Below, one piece after another: positions 26,169-30,209 of a DNA stretch of 64,000 nt; within the stretch, counting starts at the first letter, position 1; each line of letters begins with the position of its first letter. The position numbers and the translations under genes are program-made. A model generated the notes under the pieces. It was not told where the DNA came from and ran no database searches. It worked only from the letters and a program-made list of their open reading frames with translations. Source of the stretch: Macrostomum lignano (Eukaryota); assembly GCA_002269645.1 (NCBI GenBank), contig NIVC01000109.1, forward strand, positions 908,780 through 972,779. Direction: 5' to 3'.

Positions 26169-29100
26169 TTAAAATGAATTCTTTACAAAAGATAGAAACT
26201 CTGGCTTTGTAAGCAGAGTCCAATAAGCCTTGGGAGTTTTTGGGGCAGCGGCGGGGGCGGCGTCGGAGGCTTCGCCGTTCGCGCTGGCCTCGGCGGCTGA
26301 AGAGTCCGATGGTTGATCAGCTTGTTGGCTTGTCCGGCGCCGCTTGGCCAGAAAGAAATTGAATTTATTGAAAACATCGGCCGCAACAGCCGTCTCCTCG
26401 GCGTCCCACAGGCGGAGCGACTCCTCCATTGTGAGGCGTCGCTTTAGAGAGGGCGGCGCGGCGGCAGGATAGGCGAAGTCGGGCTGGTAATCGGCGATAG
26501 GCTCCGCAGGACAGTCAGGTTTCTTCTGCTCTTTGCGCGCTCTATGGCGACGCTCACGGCTTCGGCTGCGCCTGCGATTGCTGCTTCGGCTGCGACTATT
26601 GCTGCGTCTTCTATCACTGGTGCTGCTTTTGCGACGGCTTCTGCTGTCGCTGCTTTTTCTATGGCCGCTACTGATTTTACGATTACTGCTGCTACTGCTA
26701 TTGCTGCTGCTGCTACTGATCCGACGACTACGACTGCTTCTTCTATAGTTGCTGTCGTTTCTGCGATAGTTGCTGCCTCGGTCGCTGCTGCGATACCTGT
26801 CCTGACTGCGGCTCGGCCTGCGCGATTCAAACAGGTTGAATTGTACTAAAATTCACTGCCTCTATGATGCATGCAAATTCGAAATACAAAATGCTATTAC
26901 AGACTTACCTGTCGCTAGCAGCGGCCCTACTGCAGCTATTATGGCTGCTGATGCCGGGACTGACTGCAGGCACTGGTTTCCCAGATTTATTCTGAGCGGC
27001 AGGTACTGGTGAACTGGATTTCGATGTGACAGGCACCAGTGTTTCTGTAGATGCTGCGACCAGCGAGTCTGAAACCTGTGGATCTGGCACAGGTGCAGCT
27101 GATACCTGTGGATCTGGCACAGGTGCAGCTGATACCTGTGGATCTGGCACAGGTGCAGCTGATACCTGTGGATCTGGCACAGGTGCAGCTGATACCTGTG
27201 GATCTGGAACAGGTGCAGCTGATACCTGTGGATCTGGAACAGGTGCAGCTGATACCTGTGGATCCGGAACAGGTACAGCCGATACCTGTGGATCTGGGGG
27301 CACAGGTGTGGCAGAATCCCGTAGCAATGACACAGGCGTGGCAAACACCGATGAAGCAGACTCAGGTGCGGCGGACACCAGTGGAGTAGACACAGGTCGA
27401 GCAGACACTGGTGCGGCAGACCCCTGTGGAGCAGACACAGGTGCGACAGACACGGGTTTAGCGCCCGACCTGGCCGCCGCCAAGCGCACCCTGGGATCCC
27501 GGCTCTCCAGCAGCTGGGCCTGCTCCTGGGCGGCCTTAGCGGCGGCCTCAATACGCTGCTTGCCGATAGCCTCGGCCGCCTGTTTCATCCGGTCGGCCAG
27601 GTCGCTGAAACAGTCCTGCAGATTGTAGCATCGAACGGTTGAACGGCAGACTGGCGCCCACTGCGCGCCCGGGTCGGTCGAGCCTTGGCAGAGCAACTGG
27701 CGCCGGGGAATGGGCAGCCAGATCAGCACGTGAATCAGATTCTTCGTGCGGCCCAGCATGCGGGTAGCGCTGTCTAGTTGAAGCCGCTTAGATAGCGCCG
27801 ACTGCGACGGCACCAAATAGCAGAGCGCGCCGGCGCCGTCAGCCGCTTCGGTCATGGGCGCCAGCAGCAGGCGGTCCTTGGTGATCAGCATCTCGCAGAG
27901 TGTCCGGGCCCGGGCGGCGTTAGACGGGTCGAACAGTCCGGCCAGGTAGCTGACGTAGCCGGCGCTGGAGTCGGCCAGGCGGCAGACGGGCTTCTCCTCG
28001 GTCAGGGAGACGCCACAGTTGGCCAGGCGGGCCTCCAGATCGGCCGAGTCGACAACGCGGCAGGGGGTGGCCGACGGCAGCGAGCCGAGCTGCAGAAATG
28101 GCAGCACGGAGGGCGTTTTCTCAAGCGAGACCAGGCCGAGCTTCAGGCTGGGTCCCGCTGGCAGCAGGGGCAGCAGGACTTCGCCAACAAGGTAGGCGCC
28201 ATCGTTGAATTTTTTCACCCAATCTTGCCGATCGGGGCACACGGGCCGCGGCCGTCGTTGACTTCGGCTACGAATCGGGTTCGACTCAGTGGAAGATTCG
28301 GCGGAGGAGGACACGGCTTCAGCTGATGCTGCTGAGCACTTTGCATTTTCCTGCTGCTTCTGCTCAGGTTTAGGCGCATGCTCCAGCGTCTCAGCTTCAT
28401 CCGTCTGATCCTGTTGCATTTGCTGTTGAACCTGCTGCGCCTGCGTCTCCTGTTGTTGTTGTTGCTTTGGCTGCTTGCGGTCGAGTGTCGGCTGGGTCTT
28501 CCGCTTGAAGCACTGGTCCCTGATCTGGTGCACGGGATTTGGGATAAACTATTCGATGTCTCAGAATATGCTTTGTATGCAACGGTTGCCTATTCTAATC
28601 AGTAATCTACTAGTAATCTATCTGTAAATCGTTAAAAGCGATGCAAAAAAATAAAAAACTTAATGGAGATACCTAGTTCTCAATAAATGACAGATGCTCA
28701 AGATGCAAATTAATAAACACAAATATCGTAAGCAGAGAAAAGTTTCCTACAGGGCGTAGGCTGAGCTCGAACTTAAGCATCACAGCTTCACTGTTGATGA
28801 TGAATGGCCTTGATTCAAGAGGCAAGTCTGCGTTTGCTGGTGAGCAAAGTAGGGAGCAGGAAATGTCCCAGAAAGCGACACTGGAAAGGTCTCAACAGGG
28901 AGACTCTATTAGTGGACAGCTTCAGAGCCTGGTTCAAATTCCAGGCCAAAATGCTTACCAAGCCATCGAACTTGAATTGAACAGCAGCCACAGGCAGCAC
29001 GTGCCTGGGATGGTCCATCAATTCCAGGTCGGGTCCGTACTCAAATAGGAACACCTGGCTGCTATGAAATCCGGCTTCAATTATGCTTTCAGCTTTACTA

Positions 29101-30209
29101 TTAATTAATTCATCGTCTGTAAGCGTCTGACGAACGCTCTCGTGACAGTCGTACATTGGCTGTGGCTCCACAACGCTGTCGCCCTCGGTCCAGTAGCAGA
29201 CGCGGCCGCGAACGTAGCGACAGATGACCAGCCAGCCAGTCTTTGGCAGGCCGAACTTCGGTGAGATCCGATCGACGTACCGGCCCAGGGAGACGCCGGT
29301 AGAGCCGATGGCCAGAGTCGAGTCTGGCAGGTTGCCGCGGCGGATGCCGTTCTCAGCAATGCCACGCAATCGATCCATTACGTCCGGCACGGGCGCCAGG
29401 TAGACGAAACCGTACCGCTCATCCAGCTTGACGGAGCCAGCCAGGGCGGCCAGATTGCTGGCGTTTTCTTCGGCAATGGCGGCCTGGATCTCCGCCTTCT
29501 TGGTGGCGAACTGTGACAACAGAATTACTTCATTTGGTTATTTTTGTGCACTAGAATTCGATATAGTACTGCTAGTAGCAGCAACCAGCTAAGCGCATTT
29601 CTATAAACTGCTTATTTTTACCTTATCACCGAGGCTCTTGTTGCCGATAGCAAATACTTTTGACGGGGAAAATTTGCTTCTTAATTCCTTATTCAAGAAG
29701 CCGCGCGATATGATGCAGTTAATGTCGTGCTTGTACTCGTTGGAATTCAGGTCAACGCTGCGCAGAAATTCTGCAAATAGAAAGAAGAAAGGTAAGTAGT
29801 CTACAGCCTGAAAAAGCTATTTACTAAGGCTAAATTGGTTATTAGCTTAGTCACCCTTGGAGCTACGCGCCACTTTAGGCACCCGGATCTGTTTCAAAGC
29901 CTCTGTGCCAACGTAGCGCTCGTTAACAACATTTGGATGAAACCTGCCGGCCGAACCCGAAGCCATGGAATCGGCTGTCTGATTGAGGCCTCCAGACGCA
30001 GCGGCGGTGGTGACCTTTTTCTTCTTCTTTTTAATTGGAGAAGCCGAGCCAATATTATTATTGTTGCTGCAGTTGGCAATGTTATTATTGTCTTTTGGCC
30101 CGGAGCTTCTCTCCGACAGCGATAATGAAGGCGGTTGATAGTGCCTCAACGCCTGGAATTGCGAGTTTGAACAGCGAGGTTTAAACGGCGGCATTAAGGG
30201 TGAATTCAT
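26169..30209 (-). CDS. TASOR-like: TASOR/FAM208-like protein (DUF3715 pseudo-PARP + SPOC + R/S/Y-rich tail), about 1106 aa, 5 exons
   Basis: Exons 30209-29855, 29770-29622, 29510-28959, 28524-26909, 26817-26169 join in frame (3321 nt, all GT-AG). Pseudo-PARP motifs: SVDLNSNEY...RGFL...NKSLGDKFATKKAEI, GIRRG...GSTGVSLGRYVD, VICRYVRGRV, EPQPMYDCHES, SQVFLFEYGPDLELMDHPRHVLPVAAVQF. These parallel recalled human TASOR motifs (GVYLSRYAD, IFKIMKGKI, DPTPKHECHVS, TQYYFYEYG...RPRHVCPYAVVSF). The SPOC-like block ending LCYLVPSQ...LIHVLIWLPIPR parallels YLFLLSPYQ...VLHALFLFQEPR. Start and true C-terminus are uncertain. Confidence 0.85.
27075..27297 (-). repeat. Coding 30-bp tandem repeat inside the TASOR-like gene
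   Basis: About 7-8 copies encoding PVPDPQVSAA within exon 4. Confidence 0.92.

What the first reader, a model, noticed from the sequence alone, without database searches (positions are those of the whole stretch)
26169..30209. Candidate invertebrate HUSH scaffold: a TASOR-type gene with pseudo-PARP (DUF3715) followed by SPOC
Seen: five GT-AG exons join without stops into about 1106 aa; the ORF track shows only fragments. Established: the DUF3715 pseudo-PARP + SPOC arrangement defines TASOR, the core of the HUSH complex that silences retroelements and intronless foreign DNA, characterised mainly in vertebrates; TEX15 shares the domain. Motif matches run across three exons, and the PARP catalytic His position (RYGFVY) is not His, as expected for a pseudo-enzyme. 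Inference: this probable flatworm has a HUSH-like silencing pathway. I cannot tell whether this homolog has been described before.
Basis: partly seen in the sequence, partly recalled or inferred. Interest (0 to 1): 0.85.

Follow-up and report, generated by a model that had tools for sequence, protein, structure and literature searches.

The report
Flatworm TASOR-like pseudo-PARP gene
This is an intact five-exon gene of the flatworm Macrostomum lignano for a TASOR-like protein with an inactive PARP-type domain, a family tied to silencing of jumping genes in vertebrates; near-identical proteins are already in databases and the family is already reported across animals, so it is a solid but ordinary find.

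Summary
On the minus strand, five GT-AG exons (30209-26169) join without stops into 1114 aa, or 1106 aa with an in-frame alternative acceptor at 28524. Exons are 44-62% GC and introns 35-40%.

The organism is Macrostomum lignano. UniProt proteins 91-97% identical are already named "DUF3715 domain-containing protein".

The pseudo-PARP call is firm:
- Pfam PF12509 passes its cut-off (33.9 bits against 28.5).
- phmmer hits the TASOR crystal structure 6TL1 (E 2e-7).
- A family profile that includes this protein hits 6TL1 at 4.7e-79.
- The PARP His-Tyr-Glu positions read Val-Ser-Leu.

The "SPOC" call is only weakly supported. There is no Pfam hit, though real quail TASOR has none either. hhalign against a TASOR-type SPOC profile gives score 26.5 and P about 1e-3, above all 300 shuffles, at only 18-23% probability. 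A low-confidence AlphaFold model has the SHARP SPOC domain as its top Foldseek match, but at E 0.32.

DomI, DomII and PIN are not detected. HUSH partners cannot be searched from one window. After the second domain come Pro-rich repeats and a 102-aa Arg/Ser domain, both skipped by public gene models.

TASOR-like proteins in invertebrates were published in 2023. Interest is modest.

The parts
29855..30209 (-). Coding exon 1 (ATG at 30209; aa 1-118 plus 1 nt). Contains a Lys run at 30015-30032 (PIKKKKKKV, aa 58-66) that looks like a nuclear localisation signal.
   Evidence: Donor AGG|GTGACT. The N-terminus is the same as in public model P0001. Calling the Lys run an NLS is inference from the sequence.
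29622..29770 (-). Coding exon 2 (aa 119-168).
   Evidence: Acceptor TTTGCAG|AA, donor AAG|GTAAAA. The junctions restore motifs conserved across phyla.
28959..29510 (-). Coding exon 3 (aa 169-352). This is the core of the pseudo-PARP domain. The Pfam PF12509 match maps to 28989-29369.
   Evidence: PF12509, E 3.7e-8, 33.9 bits against a cut-off of 28.5. (6TL1 TASOR, E 2.2e-7, aa 214-349). Coordinates.
28959..29924 (-). Extended DUF3715 / TASOR-type pseudo-PARP domain, aa 96-352, spread over exons 1-3 (the range includes introns 1 and 2). The PARP His-Tyr-Glu positions read Val-Ser-Leu.
   Evidence: alignment with 15 homologues. (family profile against 6TL1, E 4.7e-79 over the whole chain; ZAP/PARP13, E 2.9e-4). 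(68 homologues, nearly all matching this region).
26909..28548 (-). Coding exon 4 (aa 353-898), one open frame of 547 codons. An alternative in-frame acceptor places the exon start at 28524.
   Evidence: Donor GACAG|GTAAGT.
28258..28548 (-). Gln-rich low-complexity linker (aa 353-449) between the two globular domains.
   Evidence: Public model P0002 reads it in a shifted frame.
27700..28224 (-). Second globular domain (aa 461-635), a candidate divergent SPOC-like beta-barrel. The part with the hhalign signal is aa 549-640 (27685-27960).
   Evidence: 35-40% identical to M. lignano paralogue P0005. hhalign against a TASOR-type SPOC profile: score 26.5, P 0.0009-0.0014, probability 18-23%; 0 of 300 shuffles reach it. 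AlphaFold model pLDDT 46. Foldseek top hit is 1OW1, the SHARP SPOC domain, at E 0.32. No Pfam hit.
27496..27630 (-). Predicted long alpha-helix (aa 659-703) after the second domain.
   Evidence: helix 213-253 of the modelled piece, the best pLDDT in the model at 60-70. Partly conserved in P0005.
27064..27306 (-). Tandem 30-nt repeat encoding about 8 copies of PVPDPQVSAA (aa 767-847).
   Evidence: 27069-27297, period 30, 7.6 copies, 96% matches.. Copy number and sequence differ in P0003.
26169..26817 (-). Coding exon 5 (aa 899-1114 plus the stop codon).
   Evidence: Acceptor CGCGCAG|G. The last 90 aa are 99% identical to the C-terminus of P0001.
26517..26913 (-). Arg/Ser-rich (RS) domain, aa 898-999: 35 Ser and 31 Arg in 102 residues. 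The range includes the 91-nt intron 4 (26818-26908).
   Evidence: It is in the same frame as the conserved C-terminus. Public models P0001 and P0002 skip it.
26172..26516 (-). C-terminal tail (aa 1000-1114). It is conserved among the M. lignano copies. No homologue was found among the 68 family members.

Best explanation
The locus is an intact, spliced Macrostomum lignano gene for a TASOR-like protein.

Shown:
- An N-terminal TASOR-type pseudo-PARP (DUF3715, also called the RDTS domain) that has lost the NAD+-binding His-Tyr-Glu triad, so it cannot be an ADP-ribosyltransferase.
- A Gln-rich linker.
- A second conserved globular domain.
- A helix, Pro-rich decapeptide repeats, an RS domain and a short conserved tail.

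Inferred:
- The second domain is a strongly diverged SPOC-like barrel. This is the domain that follows DUF3715 in 45 of the 68 relatives found (most of those long enough to show it), including the sister clade of parasitic flatworms.
- The protein is nuclear (Lys run, RS domain).
- It acts like the N-terminal module of vertebrate TASOR: a non-enzymatic scaffold that engages nascent RNA or the RNA-processing machinery and promotes co-transcriptional repression of transposons or other repetitive or foreign transcription units.

It is a TASOR-like family member, not an orthologue with the full vertebrate TASOR architecture.
For: Gene model:
- Five GT-AG exons and 1114 aa with no stop, with GC contrast between exons and introns.
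- Junctions restore conserved motifs.

Species:
- P0001-P0003 from M. lignano are 91-97% identical.

Pseudo-PARP:
- PF12509 at 33.9 bits, above the 28.5 cut-off.
- 6TL1 at E 2.2e-7.
- Family profile against 6TL1 at E 4.7e-79, then ZAP/PARP13 and PARP14/15.
- Triad positions are Val-Ser-Leu. This fits Douse et al. 2020 (PMC7532188), who report the TASOR catalytic residues replaced by hydrophobic ones.

Family placement:
- 68 homologues at E<=1e-3. The best full-length one outside Macrostomum is a Saccoglossus DUF3715-SPOC protein.
- In an NJ tree the window protein is sister to the neodermatan 'TASOR pseudo-PARP domain-containing' proteins.
- 45 of 68 homologues carry a TASOR-type SPOC right after DUF3715.
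- The neodermatan group against that SPOC profile gives 99.3% probability.

Second domain:
- Conserved with a 35-40% identical paralogue.
- hhalign gives score 26.5. Shuffles give 11.6 +/- 2.0 with a maximum of 21.7; the reversed sequence gives 12.0; controls against DomI give 13.2 and against DUF3715 nothing.
- Foldseek rank 1 and rank 3 are the SHARP SPOC domain, with Ku barrels lower in the list. Ku again dominates the hits of the paralogue model.

Function of the domain class:
- DUF3715 is required for HUSH silencing independently of complex assembly, and the TEX15 DUF3715 can replace it (PMC7532188; PMC10578480).
Against: - The SPOC assignment is sub-threshold everywhere. There is no Pfam hit. 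The TASOR-SPOC HMM gives -4 to +4 bits on the window protein, P0001 and the paralogue. hhalign probability is only 18-23%. hhalign against the neodermatan SPOC group gives P 0.31. The AlphaFold models are poor, at pLDDT 46 and 34.5. All Foldseek E-values are above 0.3.
- DomI, the MPP8-binding part, was not detected. DomII and PIN (PF23314, PF24630) are absent. So the known HUSH assembly surfaces are not demonstrable.
- No partner genes could be searched. No expression or functional data were available.
- The 3' half is uncertain. Public M. lignano models skip the repeats and the RS domain.
- The full-length Pfam scan reports no DUF3715. It appears only when the domain is scanned alone.
Confidence: 0.7

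Rival explanations
1. It is a DUF3715 (pseudo-PARP) protein, but the second domain is a lineage-specific fold unrelated to SPOC. The protein then has a Macrostomum-specific role, for example in RNA processing through its RS domain, that is not HUSH-like silencing.
For: - No significant SPOC match by Pfam, HMM or structure.
- Only one relative of the second domain exists among 1.84 billion cluster representatives, and it is an M. lignano paralogue.
- DomI, DomII and PIN were not detected.
- The RS domain is typical of splicing-related proteins.
Against: - The hhalign score is far above the shuffled and reversed controls, and the alignment is collinear over most of the SPOC profile.
- The SHARP SPOC domain is the top Foldseek hit out of 350,542 chains, even from a poor model.
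- The sister flatworm clade and most homologues have SPOC at this position.
- Real quail TASOR also gets no Pfam SPOC hit, so that negative result says little.
Confidence: 0.2
2. The main mRNA is shorter than the five-exon model. As in public models P0001 and P0002 (771-786 aa), the Pro-rich repeats and the RS domain are removed, so the protein is pseudo-PARP + second domain + helix + C-terminal tail only. This concerns the gene model, not the family assignment.
For: - P0001 and P0002 join the region after the helix to a 5-10 aa piece, and then to RRLTMEES... at 26441.
- A GT donor (GCA|GTAGGG, near 26930) and an AG acceptor (CTAAAG|CGACGC, near 26441) for the second of these junctions exist in the window.
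Against: - In the window no GT or GC donor follows ...QLLE at 27502, so the P0001 junction cannot be copied here.
- Exon 4 is one 547-codon open frame ending at a consensus donor, GACAG|GTAAGT, followed by a 91-nt AT-rich intron like the other introns.
- The RS frame is continuous with the conserved C-terminus.
- NCBI model P0003 reads through the repeats in the same frame.
- Transcript assemblies often collapse tandem repeats.
Confidence: 0.35
3. It is an active PARP-family ADP-ribosyltransferase rather than a pseudo-enzyme.
For: The fold family is PARP-like. The family profile reaches ZAP/PARP13, PARP14/15 and tankyrase weakly.
Against: - The positions aligned to the His-Tyr-Glu triad are Val, Ser and Leu.
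- The best match by far is the inactive TASOR domain 6TL1.
- Douse et al. show that domain has no NAD+ pocket.
Confidence: 0.02
4. The model is a chance concatenation of open frames, or a decaying duplicate (pseudogene) in this polyploid genome.
For: - M. lignano carries several near-identical copies: P0001-P0003 at 91-97% identity, none identical to the window protein.
- GC-rich sequence gives long spurious ORFs on both strands.
Against: - No stop or frameshift in 3345 nt across five exons.
- Conserved motifs run across the junctions.
- The domain scores pass curated thresholds.
- GC contrast between exons and introns.
Confidence: 0.03

Closest known systems
Invertebrate 'TASOR-like' proteins (DUF3715-SPOC-DomI) as defined by Schopp et al. 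2023, RNA 29:1471 (PMC10578480). Examples are Saccoglossus kowalevskii LOC102806952 (P0008) and the neodermatan flatworm 'TASOR pseudo-PARP domain-containing proteins' of Schistosoma, Opisthorchis, Fasciola, Calicophoron and Echinococcus.
   Same: An N-terminal extended DUF3715 with the same conserved motifs (IPK, S.E, F, G, DCH, Q..YEY, P..P.A). It is followed after a linker by a second globular domain at the position where the relatives carry SPOC. The window protein groups with the flatworm clade in a DUF3715 tree.
   Different: - The second domain is too diverged to be recognised as SPOC at normal thresholds.
- At about 1100 aa the protein is shorter than most relatives.
- It has a Gln-rich linker, PVPDPQVSAA repeats, an RS domain and a private C-terminal tail. 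The C-terminal tail (aa 1000-1114) has no counterpart among the 68 homologues; the repeats and the RS domain were not looked for in them.
Vertebrate TASOR / TASOR2, the core scaffold of the HUSH and HUSH2 complexes (Douse et al. 2020, PMC7532188; PDB 6TL1).
   Same: The pseudo-PARP domain is homologous (6TL1 at E 2.2e-7 alone and 4.7e-79 with the family profile). The catalytic triad is degenerate in both.
   Different: - No detectable DomI, the MPP8-binding part.
- No TASOR alpha/beta (DomII, PF23314) or PIN_TASOR (PF24630) domain, both of which quail TASOR shows clearly.
- No identifiable Periphilin-binding segment.
- It carries an RS domain that human TASOR is not described as having.
UniProt A0A1I8H9D3 and A0A1I8H023 (M. 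lignano 'DUF3715 domain-containing protein') and NCBI BOX15_Mlig000723g14.
   Same: 91-97% identical over the shared parts. They are the same gene family, or copies or alleles of this gene in the polyploid genome.
   Different: - None is identical to the window protein.
- Their models are 647-786 aa and skip or mis-frame the linker, repeats and RS domain. P0001 and P0003 use the acceptor at 28524; P0002 mis-frames the stretch that follows.
TEX15, the vertebrate piRNA-pathway factor with DUF3715.
   Same: It shares the DUF3715 / RDTS domain class.
   Different: No TEX15 domains were found. According to Schopp et al. 2023, TEX15 is vertebrate-specific. The nearest relatives of the window protein are SPOC-bearing TASOR-like proteins.
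The Periphilin N-terminal domain and the RS domains of SR-type RNA-processing proteins.
   Same: The window protein has a 102-aa disordered stretch that is 65% Arg+Ser with a few Tyr. The Periphilin NTD is enriched in Ser, Arg and Tyr and is needed for HUSH silencing (PMC7544229).
   Different: This is a resemblance in composition only. There is no sequence homology, no RRM, far fewer Tyr and acidic residues than in Periphilin, and the region may be spliced out in some isoforms.

Membership tests
DUF3715 / TASOR-type pseudo-PARP (RDTS) domain family | Match to Pfam PF12509 at or above its gathering score | tested here: met
   E 3.7e-8, 33.9 bits against a cut-off of 28.5, aa 216-342, when the N-terminal piece is scanned alone. 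The full-length scan did not list it. Near-identical P0002 carries a precomputed PF12509 hit.
DUF3715 / TASOR-type pseudo-PARP (RDTS) domain family | Sequence homology to the solved TASOR pseudo-PARP structure (PDB 6TL1) over the whole domain | tested here: met
   phmmer E 2.2e-7 (aa 214-349); a profile of the window protein plus 15 homologues hits 6TL1 at E 4.7e-79 over chain residues 1-213; the window protein aligns over the full extended domain.
DUF3715 / TASOR-type pseudo-PARP (RDTS) domain family | Loss of the PARP His-Tyr-Glu catalytic triad | tested here: met
   through the profile alignment to ZAP/PARP13, the three positions in the window protein are Val (in GFVYL), Ser (in GVSLG) and Leu (in QVFLFEY). 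Which ZAP residues form the triad is taken from my own knowledge of PARP13, not from a tool.
TASOR-like proteins (Schopp et al. 2023: DUF3715-SPOC-DomI) | SPOC beta-barrel directly downstream of DUF3715 | tested here: inconclusive
   A conserved domain exists at aa 461-640.
- hhalign against a TASOR-type SPOC profile: score 26.5, P about 1e-3, probability 18-23%, above all 300 shuffles.
- HMM against the sequence: about 0 bits.
- Against the neodermatan SPOC group: P 0.31.
- AlphaFold pLDDT 46 and 34.5.
- Foldseek top hit is 1OW1 SPOC, but at E 0.32.
- No Pfam SPOC hit, but true TASOR has none either.
TASOR-like proteins (Schopp et al. 2023: DUF3715-SPOC-DomI) | DomI after SPOC (the MPP8-binding region in human TASOR) | tested here: inconclusive
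   A DomI profile seeded from quail TASOR finds only the 13 vertebrate-clade hits. It finds no invertebrate and not the window protein. hhalign of the window region against that profile gives score 13.2, P 0.31. The test lacks the power to detect DomI in any invertebrate.
Vertebrate TASOR proper (HUSH core subunit) | C-terminal DomII (PF23314 TASOR_alpha-beta) and PIN (PF24630 PIN_TASOR) | tested here: not met
   No hit in the full-length protein or in the C-terminal piece, even at E<=10. The quail TASOR control hits both at E 1e-39 to 1e-51.
Vertebrate TASOR proper (HUSH core subunit) | Assembly with MPP8 and Periphilin, and recruitment of SETDB1 and MORC2 | not testable with these tools
   Only one 64-kb window is available, and its other genes are unrelated (sacsin-like, MFS transporter). 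The protein-search quotas were used on the gene itself.
TEX15 | TEX15 domains downstream of DUF3715 | tested here: not met
   The Pfam scan of the full protein shows no TEX15 family.
SR / RS-domain RNA-processing proteins | An RS domain together with an RNA-recognition motif | tested here: not met
   RS composition is present (35 Ser and 31 Arg in 102 aa), but no RRM or other RNA-binding Pfam domain was found.

The most novel reading that the evidence does not exclude
Macrostomum may carry a compact, single-polypeptide version of a HUSH-like sensor. In this reading a TASOR-type pseudo-PARP and a diverged SPOC core are fused to an Arg/Ser(/Tyr)-rich low-complexity tail. The tail does the RNA-binding or self-association job that Periphilin does in vertebrates, and it links the silencer directly to the splicing machinery, which would be one way to tell intron-containing from intronless transcripts. 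Alternative splicing that removes the RS region would then switch the activity on or off.
Probability: 0.1. Interest if true: 0.7.

Novelty: new member of a known kind. Interest (0 to 1): 0.3.

Why it matters
HUSH biology is known almost only from vertebrates. What the widespread invertebrate TASOR-like proteins do is untested, and I found no paper on TASOR in flatworms.

M. lignano is the flatworm in which transgenesis works (stated in the abstract of PMC7053086, listed); that RNAi also works there is my own knowledge. This gene therefore gives a practical way to ask whether the pseudo-PARP module silences transposons or intronless transgenes outside vertebrates. It could also bear on transgene silencing in that model.

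As a sequence finding it adds little. The protein is already in UniProt with the DUF3715 label, and the phylogenetic spread of the family has been published.

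Tried and rejected
1. The full-length Pfam scan showed nothing relevant. The domain appears only when scanned alone. I blame the low-complexity regions but did not prove it.
2. A profile search with an alignment of flatworm DUF3715 fragments returned only two of its own input sequences, P0006 and P0007. A search with the second domain alone returned nothing, not even the 97%-identical P0001. The word-indexed search is therefore unreliable here, and no extra homologues of the second domain could be collected.
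3. Profile search of the second domain against PDB sequences gave only a chance hit, an enoyl-CoA hydratase at E 0.98.
4. I hoped the neodermatan flatworm SPOC regions would bridge Macrostomum to TASOR SPOC. They match TASOR SPOC at 99.3% probability, but the Macrostomum domain does not match them (P 0.31).
5. AlphaFold on the paralogue P0005, run as an independent replicate, gave pLDDT 34.5. Its Foldseek list is dominated by Ku, at E 3-7 and TM about 0.1, which is not usable as proof.
6. I deliberately did not add TASOR SPOC sequences to the AlphaFold alignment. That would presuppose the answer.
7. The tail of fragment P0006 looked by eye like the first strands of the second domain, but BLASTP gives E 87, and the tail may be intron read-through on a 1-kb contig. 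I dropped it.
8. The C-terminal tail has no homologue among the family members.
9. Contig look-ups for P0004 and P0005 found nothing.
10. The Pfam MgtE_N/FliG_M hits on the ORF at 41341-43884 sit on a 36-bp x 67 satellite. I rejected them as a repeat artefact.

Full report

Yes. The region 26169-30209 carries a minus-strand gene. The mechanical ORF list shows only pieces of 120, 234, 542 and 86 aa. Joining them at GT...AG sites gives five exons: 30209-29855, 29770-29622, 29510-28959, 28548-26909 and 26817-26169. The CDS is 3345 nt, or 1114 aa, with no internal stop.

A second in-frame acceptor 24 nt downstream (exon 4 starting at 28524) gives 1106 aa.

- Exons are 44-62% GC. The four introns (84, 111, 410 and 91 nt) are 35-40% GC and the flanks 36-41%.
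- The first two junctions restore motifs conserved in homologues from other phyla.

So the model for exons 1-3 rests on more than open frames.

**2. Whose gene is it?**

A protein search returned three Macrostomum lignano proteins 91-97% identical to the model:
- UniProt A0A1I8H9D3 and A0A1I8H023, both named "DUF3715 domain-containing protein".
- NCBI BOX15_Mlig000723g14.

None is identical to the window protein. That fits the several near-identical copies in this hidden polyploid.

**3. The first domain**

- Scanned alone, the N-terminal piece matches Pfam PF12509 (DUF3715) at E 3.7e-8 and 33.9 bits, above the curated cut-off of 28.5. The full-length scan failed to list it.
- phmmer against PDB sequences finds the crystal structure of the human TASOR pseudo-PARP domain, 6TL1, at E 2.2e-7.
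- An exhaustive HMMER search of 1.84 billion cluster representatives found 68 relatives at E<=1e-3 and 21 at E<=1e-10. Nearly all match aa ~100-352.
- A profile of the window domain with 15 of these relatives hits 6TL1 at E 4.7e-79 over the whole chain. It then hits the inactive PARP domain of ZAP/PARP13 at 2.9e-4, and PARP14, PARP15 and tankyrase weakly.
- Reading the triad positions through that alignment gives Val, Ser and Leu where active PARPs have His, Tyr and Glu.

This agrees with Douse et al. 2020, who found the TASOR catalytic residues replaced by hydrophobic ones and the NAD+ pocket occluded (PMC7532188). The pseudo-PARP claim is confirmed.

**4. Where it sits in the family**

Named relatives include:
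- Saccoglossus, Branchiostoma, Dimorphilus, Tubulanus, Mytilus, Owenia and echinoderm proteins.
- Fish and bird TASOR.
- A clade of parasitic flatworm proteins that UniProt calls "TASOR pseudo-PARP domain-containing protein": Schistosoma, Calicophoron, Opisthorchis, Fasciola, Rodentolepis, Spirometra and Echinococcus.

In a rough neighbour-joining tree of the domain, the window protein groups with three short fragments of unknown origin. Together they are sister to that flatworm clade.

A jackhmmer profile seeded on the region after DUF3715 in one invertebrate protein finds the same domain right after DUF3715 in 45 of the 68 relatives. In Saccoglossus this region overlaps a sub-threshold Pfam SPOC hit (E 3.2e-4). 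That ties the profile to SPOC. The parasitic flatworm group matches it at 99.3% hhalign probability.

**5. The second domain: is it SPOC?**

A real second domain exists. Residues ~461-640 are 35-40% identical to another M. lignano protein, A0A1I8I998 (P0005), with many invariant hydrophobic, Gly, Pro, Cys and Trp positions. It is hard to classify.

*Negative or uninformative results*
- No Pfam hit at E<=10. True quail TASOR also has no Pfam SPOC hit, so this says little.
- The TASOR-SPOC HMM gives about 0 bits, though the alignment falls in the expected register.
- hhalign against the parasitic flatworm group alone gives P 0.31.

*Weakly positive results*
- hhalign of the two-paralogue alignment against the SPOC profile gives score 26.5, P 0.0009-0.0014 and probability 18-23%. 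It is collinear over most of the profile, and the confident part is the C-terminal half.
- Three hundred column shuffles gave 11.6 +/- 2.0 (maximum 21.7). The reversed sequence gave 12.0. Control profiles gave 13.2 (DomI) or nothing (DUF3715).
- AlphaFold with this shallow alignment gave pLDDT 46. The order of strands and helices is compatible with SPOC.
- Foldseek against 350,542 PDB chains put the SHARP SPOC domain at ranks 1 and 3 and Ku barrels lower. All E-values are 0.3 or more and TM is 0.2-0.3.
- A replicate on the paralogue was worse (pLDDT 34.5). Its list is dominated by Ku at E 3-7.

The position in the protein, the family context and three weak but concordant signals make a diverged SPOC-like barrel the most likely reading, at about two in three. 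It is not shown.

**6. What else is, and is not, in the protein**

- DomI was not detected. My DomI profile recognises only vertebrates, so the test has little power.
- DomII and PIN (PF23314, PF24630) are absent, whereas quail TASOR shows both clearly.
- After the second domain come a predicted long helix and about eight copies of PVPDPQVSAA, encoded by a 30-nt tandem repeat with 96% matches.
- Next is a 102-aa stretch with 35 Ser and 31 Arg.
- Last is a 115-aa tail with no homologue among the family members.
- Exon 1 has a Lys run, PIKKKKKKV.

Public models P0001 and P0002 skip the repeats and the RS stretch. In the window no GT follows the point where P0001 leaves exon 4. The five-exon model ends exon 4 at a consensus GTAAGT donor before a typical short AT-rich intron. 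I therefore prefer the long model. Isoforms without the RS region cannot be excluded without RNA data.

**7. How it most likely works**

*Shown*
- An intact gene for a non-catalytic PARP-fold protein of the TASOR-like family.

*Inferred from the family*
- In human TASOR the DUF3715 domain is required for H3K9me3 deposition and silencing, independently of complex assembly (PMC7532188).
- The domain from TEX15 can replace it. [quoted passage not shown]
- The flatworm protein therefore most likely acts in the nucleus as a scaffold on nascent transcripts that promotes repression of repeats or foreign DNA.
- The RS stretch, if it is in the mature protein, would add contact with RNA or the splicing machinery. 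Its composition recalls, loosely, the Ser/Arg/Tyr-rich N-terminal domain of Periphilin that HUSH needs (PMC7544229).

None of this function was tested, and no partner gene could be looked for.

**8. Novelty and verdict**

- Near-identical proteins already carry the DUF3715 label in UniProt.
- Schopp et al. 2023 state that TASOR-like DUF3715-SPOC-DomI proteins occur throughout metazoa, invertebrates included.
- Appel et al. 2023 note the DUF3715-SPOC arrangement in amphioxus.
- I found no paper on TASOR in flatworms.

The finding is a correct recognition of a known kind of gene in a new host. It has an unusually diverged second domain and an RS tail. Interest is modest. The main value is that M. 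lignano is genetically tractable, so the function of an invertebrate TASOR-like protein could be tested directly.

Noticed in passing
window 41381-43795 (ORF 41341-43884, minus strand): A 36-bp unit repeated 67 times at 97% matches. The 847-aa ORF over it scores strongly against Pfam MgtE_N (E 8e-58) and FliG_M. This is almost certainly an artefact of the periodic sequence, not a bacterial-type gene.
   Followed up: partly
window 16068-17417 and 24115-24864: The same 42-bp satellite unit (TTGGCTAGATTAGCAATCCATTCTATTCCTTCATCAGTGATG) forms two arrays of 32 and about 15 copies. The second array lies about 1.3 kb downstream of the stop codon of the TASOR-like gene.
   Followed up: no
window 2-901, 1410-2512, 8619-8972, 11615-13101, 17849-18289, 19641-20028, 22441-23142, 44556-45592: The window is unusually rich in micro- and minisatellites: a 22-mer x41, (CTAA)n, a 30-mer, 1.5 kb of (TAC)n, (AGT)n, (GACA)n, a 34-mer x21 and a 21/43-mer. 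The (TAC)n array produces fake 500-aa poly-Val/Ala ORFs on both strands.
   Followed up: partly
window 55647-63187, minus strand: Two large ORFs (1711 and 851 aa) with a sacsin domain (PF25794, E 5e-72) and a C-terminal HEPN domain (PF05168). They probably form one sacsin-like gene.
   Followed up: no
window 46992-48791, plus strand: A 599-aa single ORF with Sugar_tr / MFS_1 transporter domains (E 3e-27).
   Followed up: no
window 36382-38376, minus strand: A 664-aa uninterrupted ORF starting at ATG. It is very rich in Ser, Thr and Pro, has a basic C-terminal part, and has no Pfam match. It is the next large ORF upstream of the TASOR-like gene on the same strand.
   Followed up: partly
public proteins P0001-P0003 compared with window 26169-28548: The three public M. 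lignano models disagree with each other. P0002 translates the Gln-rich linker in a shifted frame. P0003 runs into an Ala/Val-rich frame after the repeats. P0001 and P0002 jump over the repeats and the RS region. The locus needs re-annotation with long reads.
   Followed up: partly
P0005 (UniProt A0A1I8I998, M. lignano); matches window 27574-28248 at 35% identity: M. lignano has a diverged paralogue of the second domain, known only as a 258-aa fragment. Whether it also carries a DUF3715 domain is unknown, and no contig could be retrieved for it.
   Followed up: partly
L001 (Logan SRR21676451, 1074 bp) and L002 (ENA ERZ27256860, 949 bp): The closest DUF3715 relatives outside M. lignano (P0006 and P0007, 31-35% identity) come from short contigs of unidentified samples. 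With P0004 they form the sister group of the window protein in the tree.
   Followed up: partly
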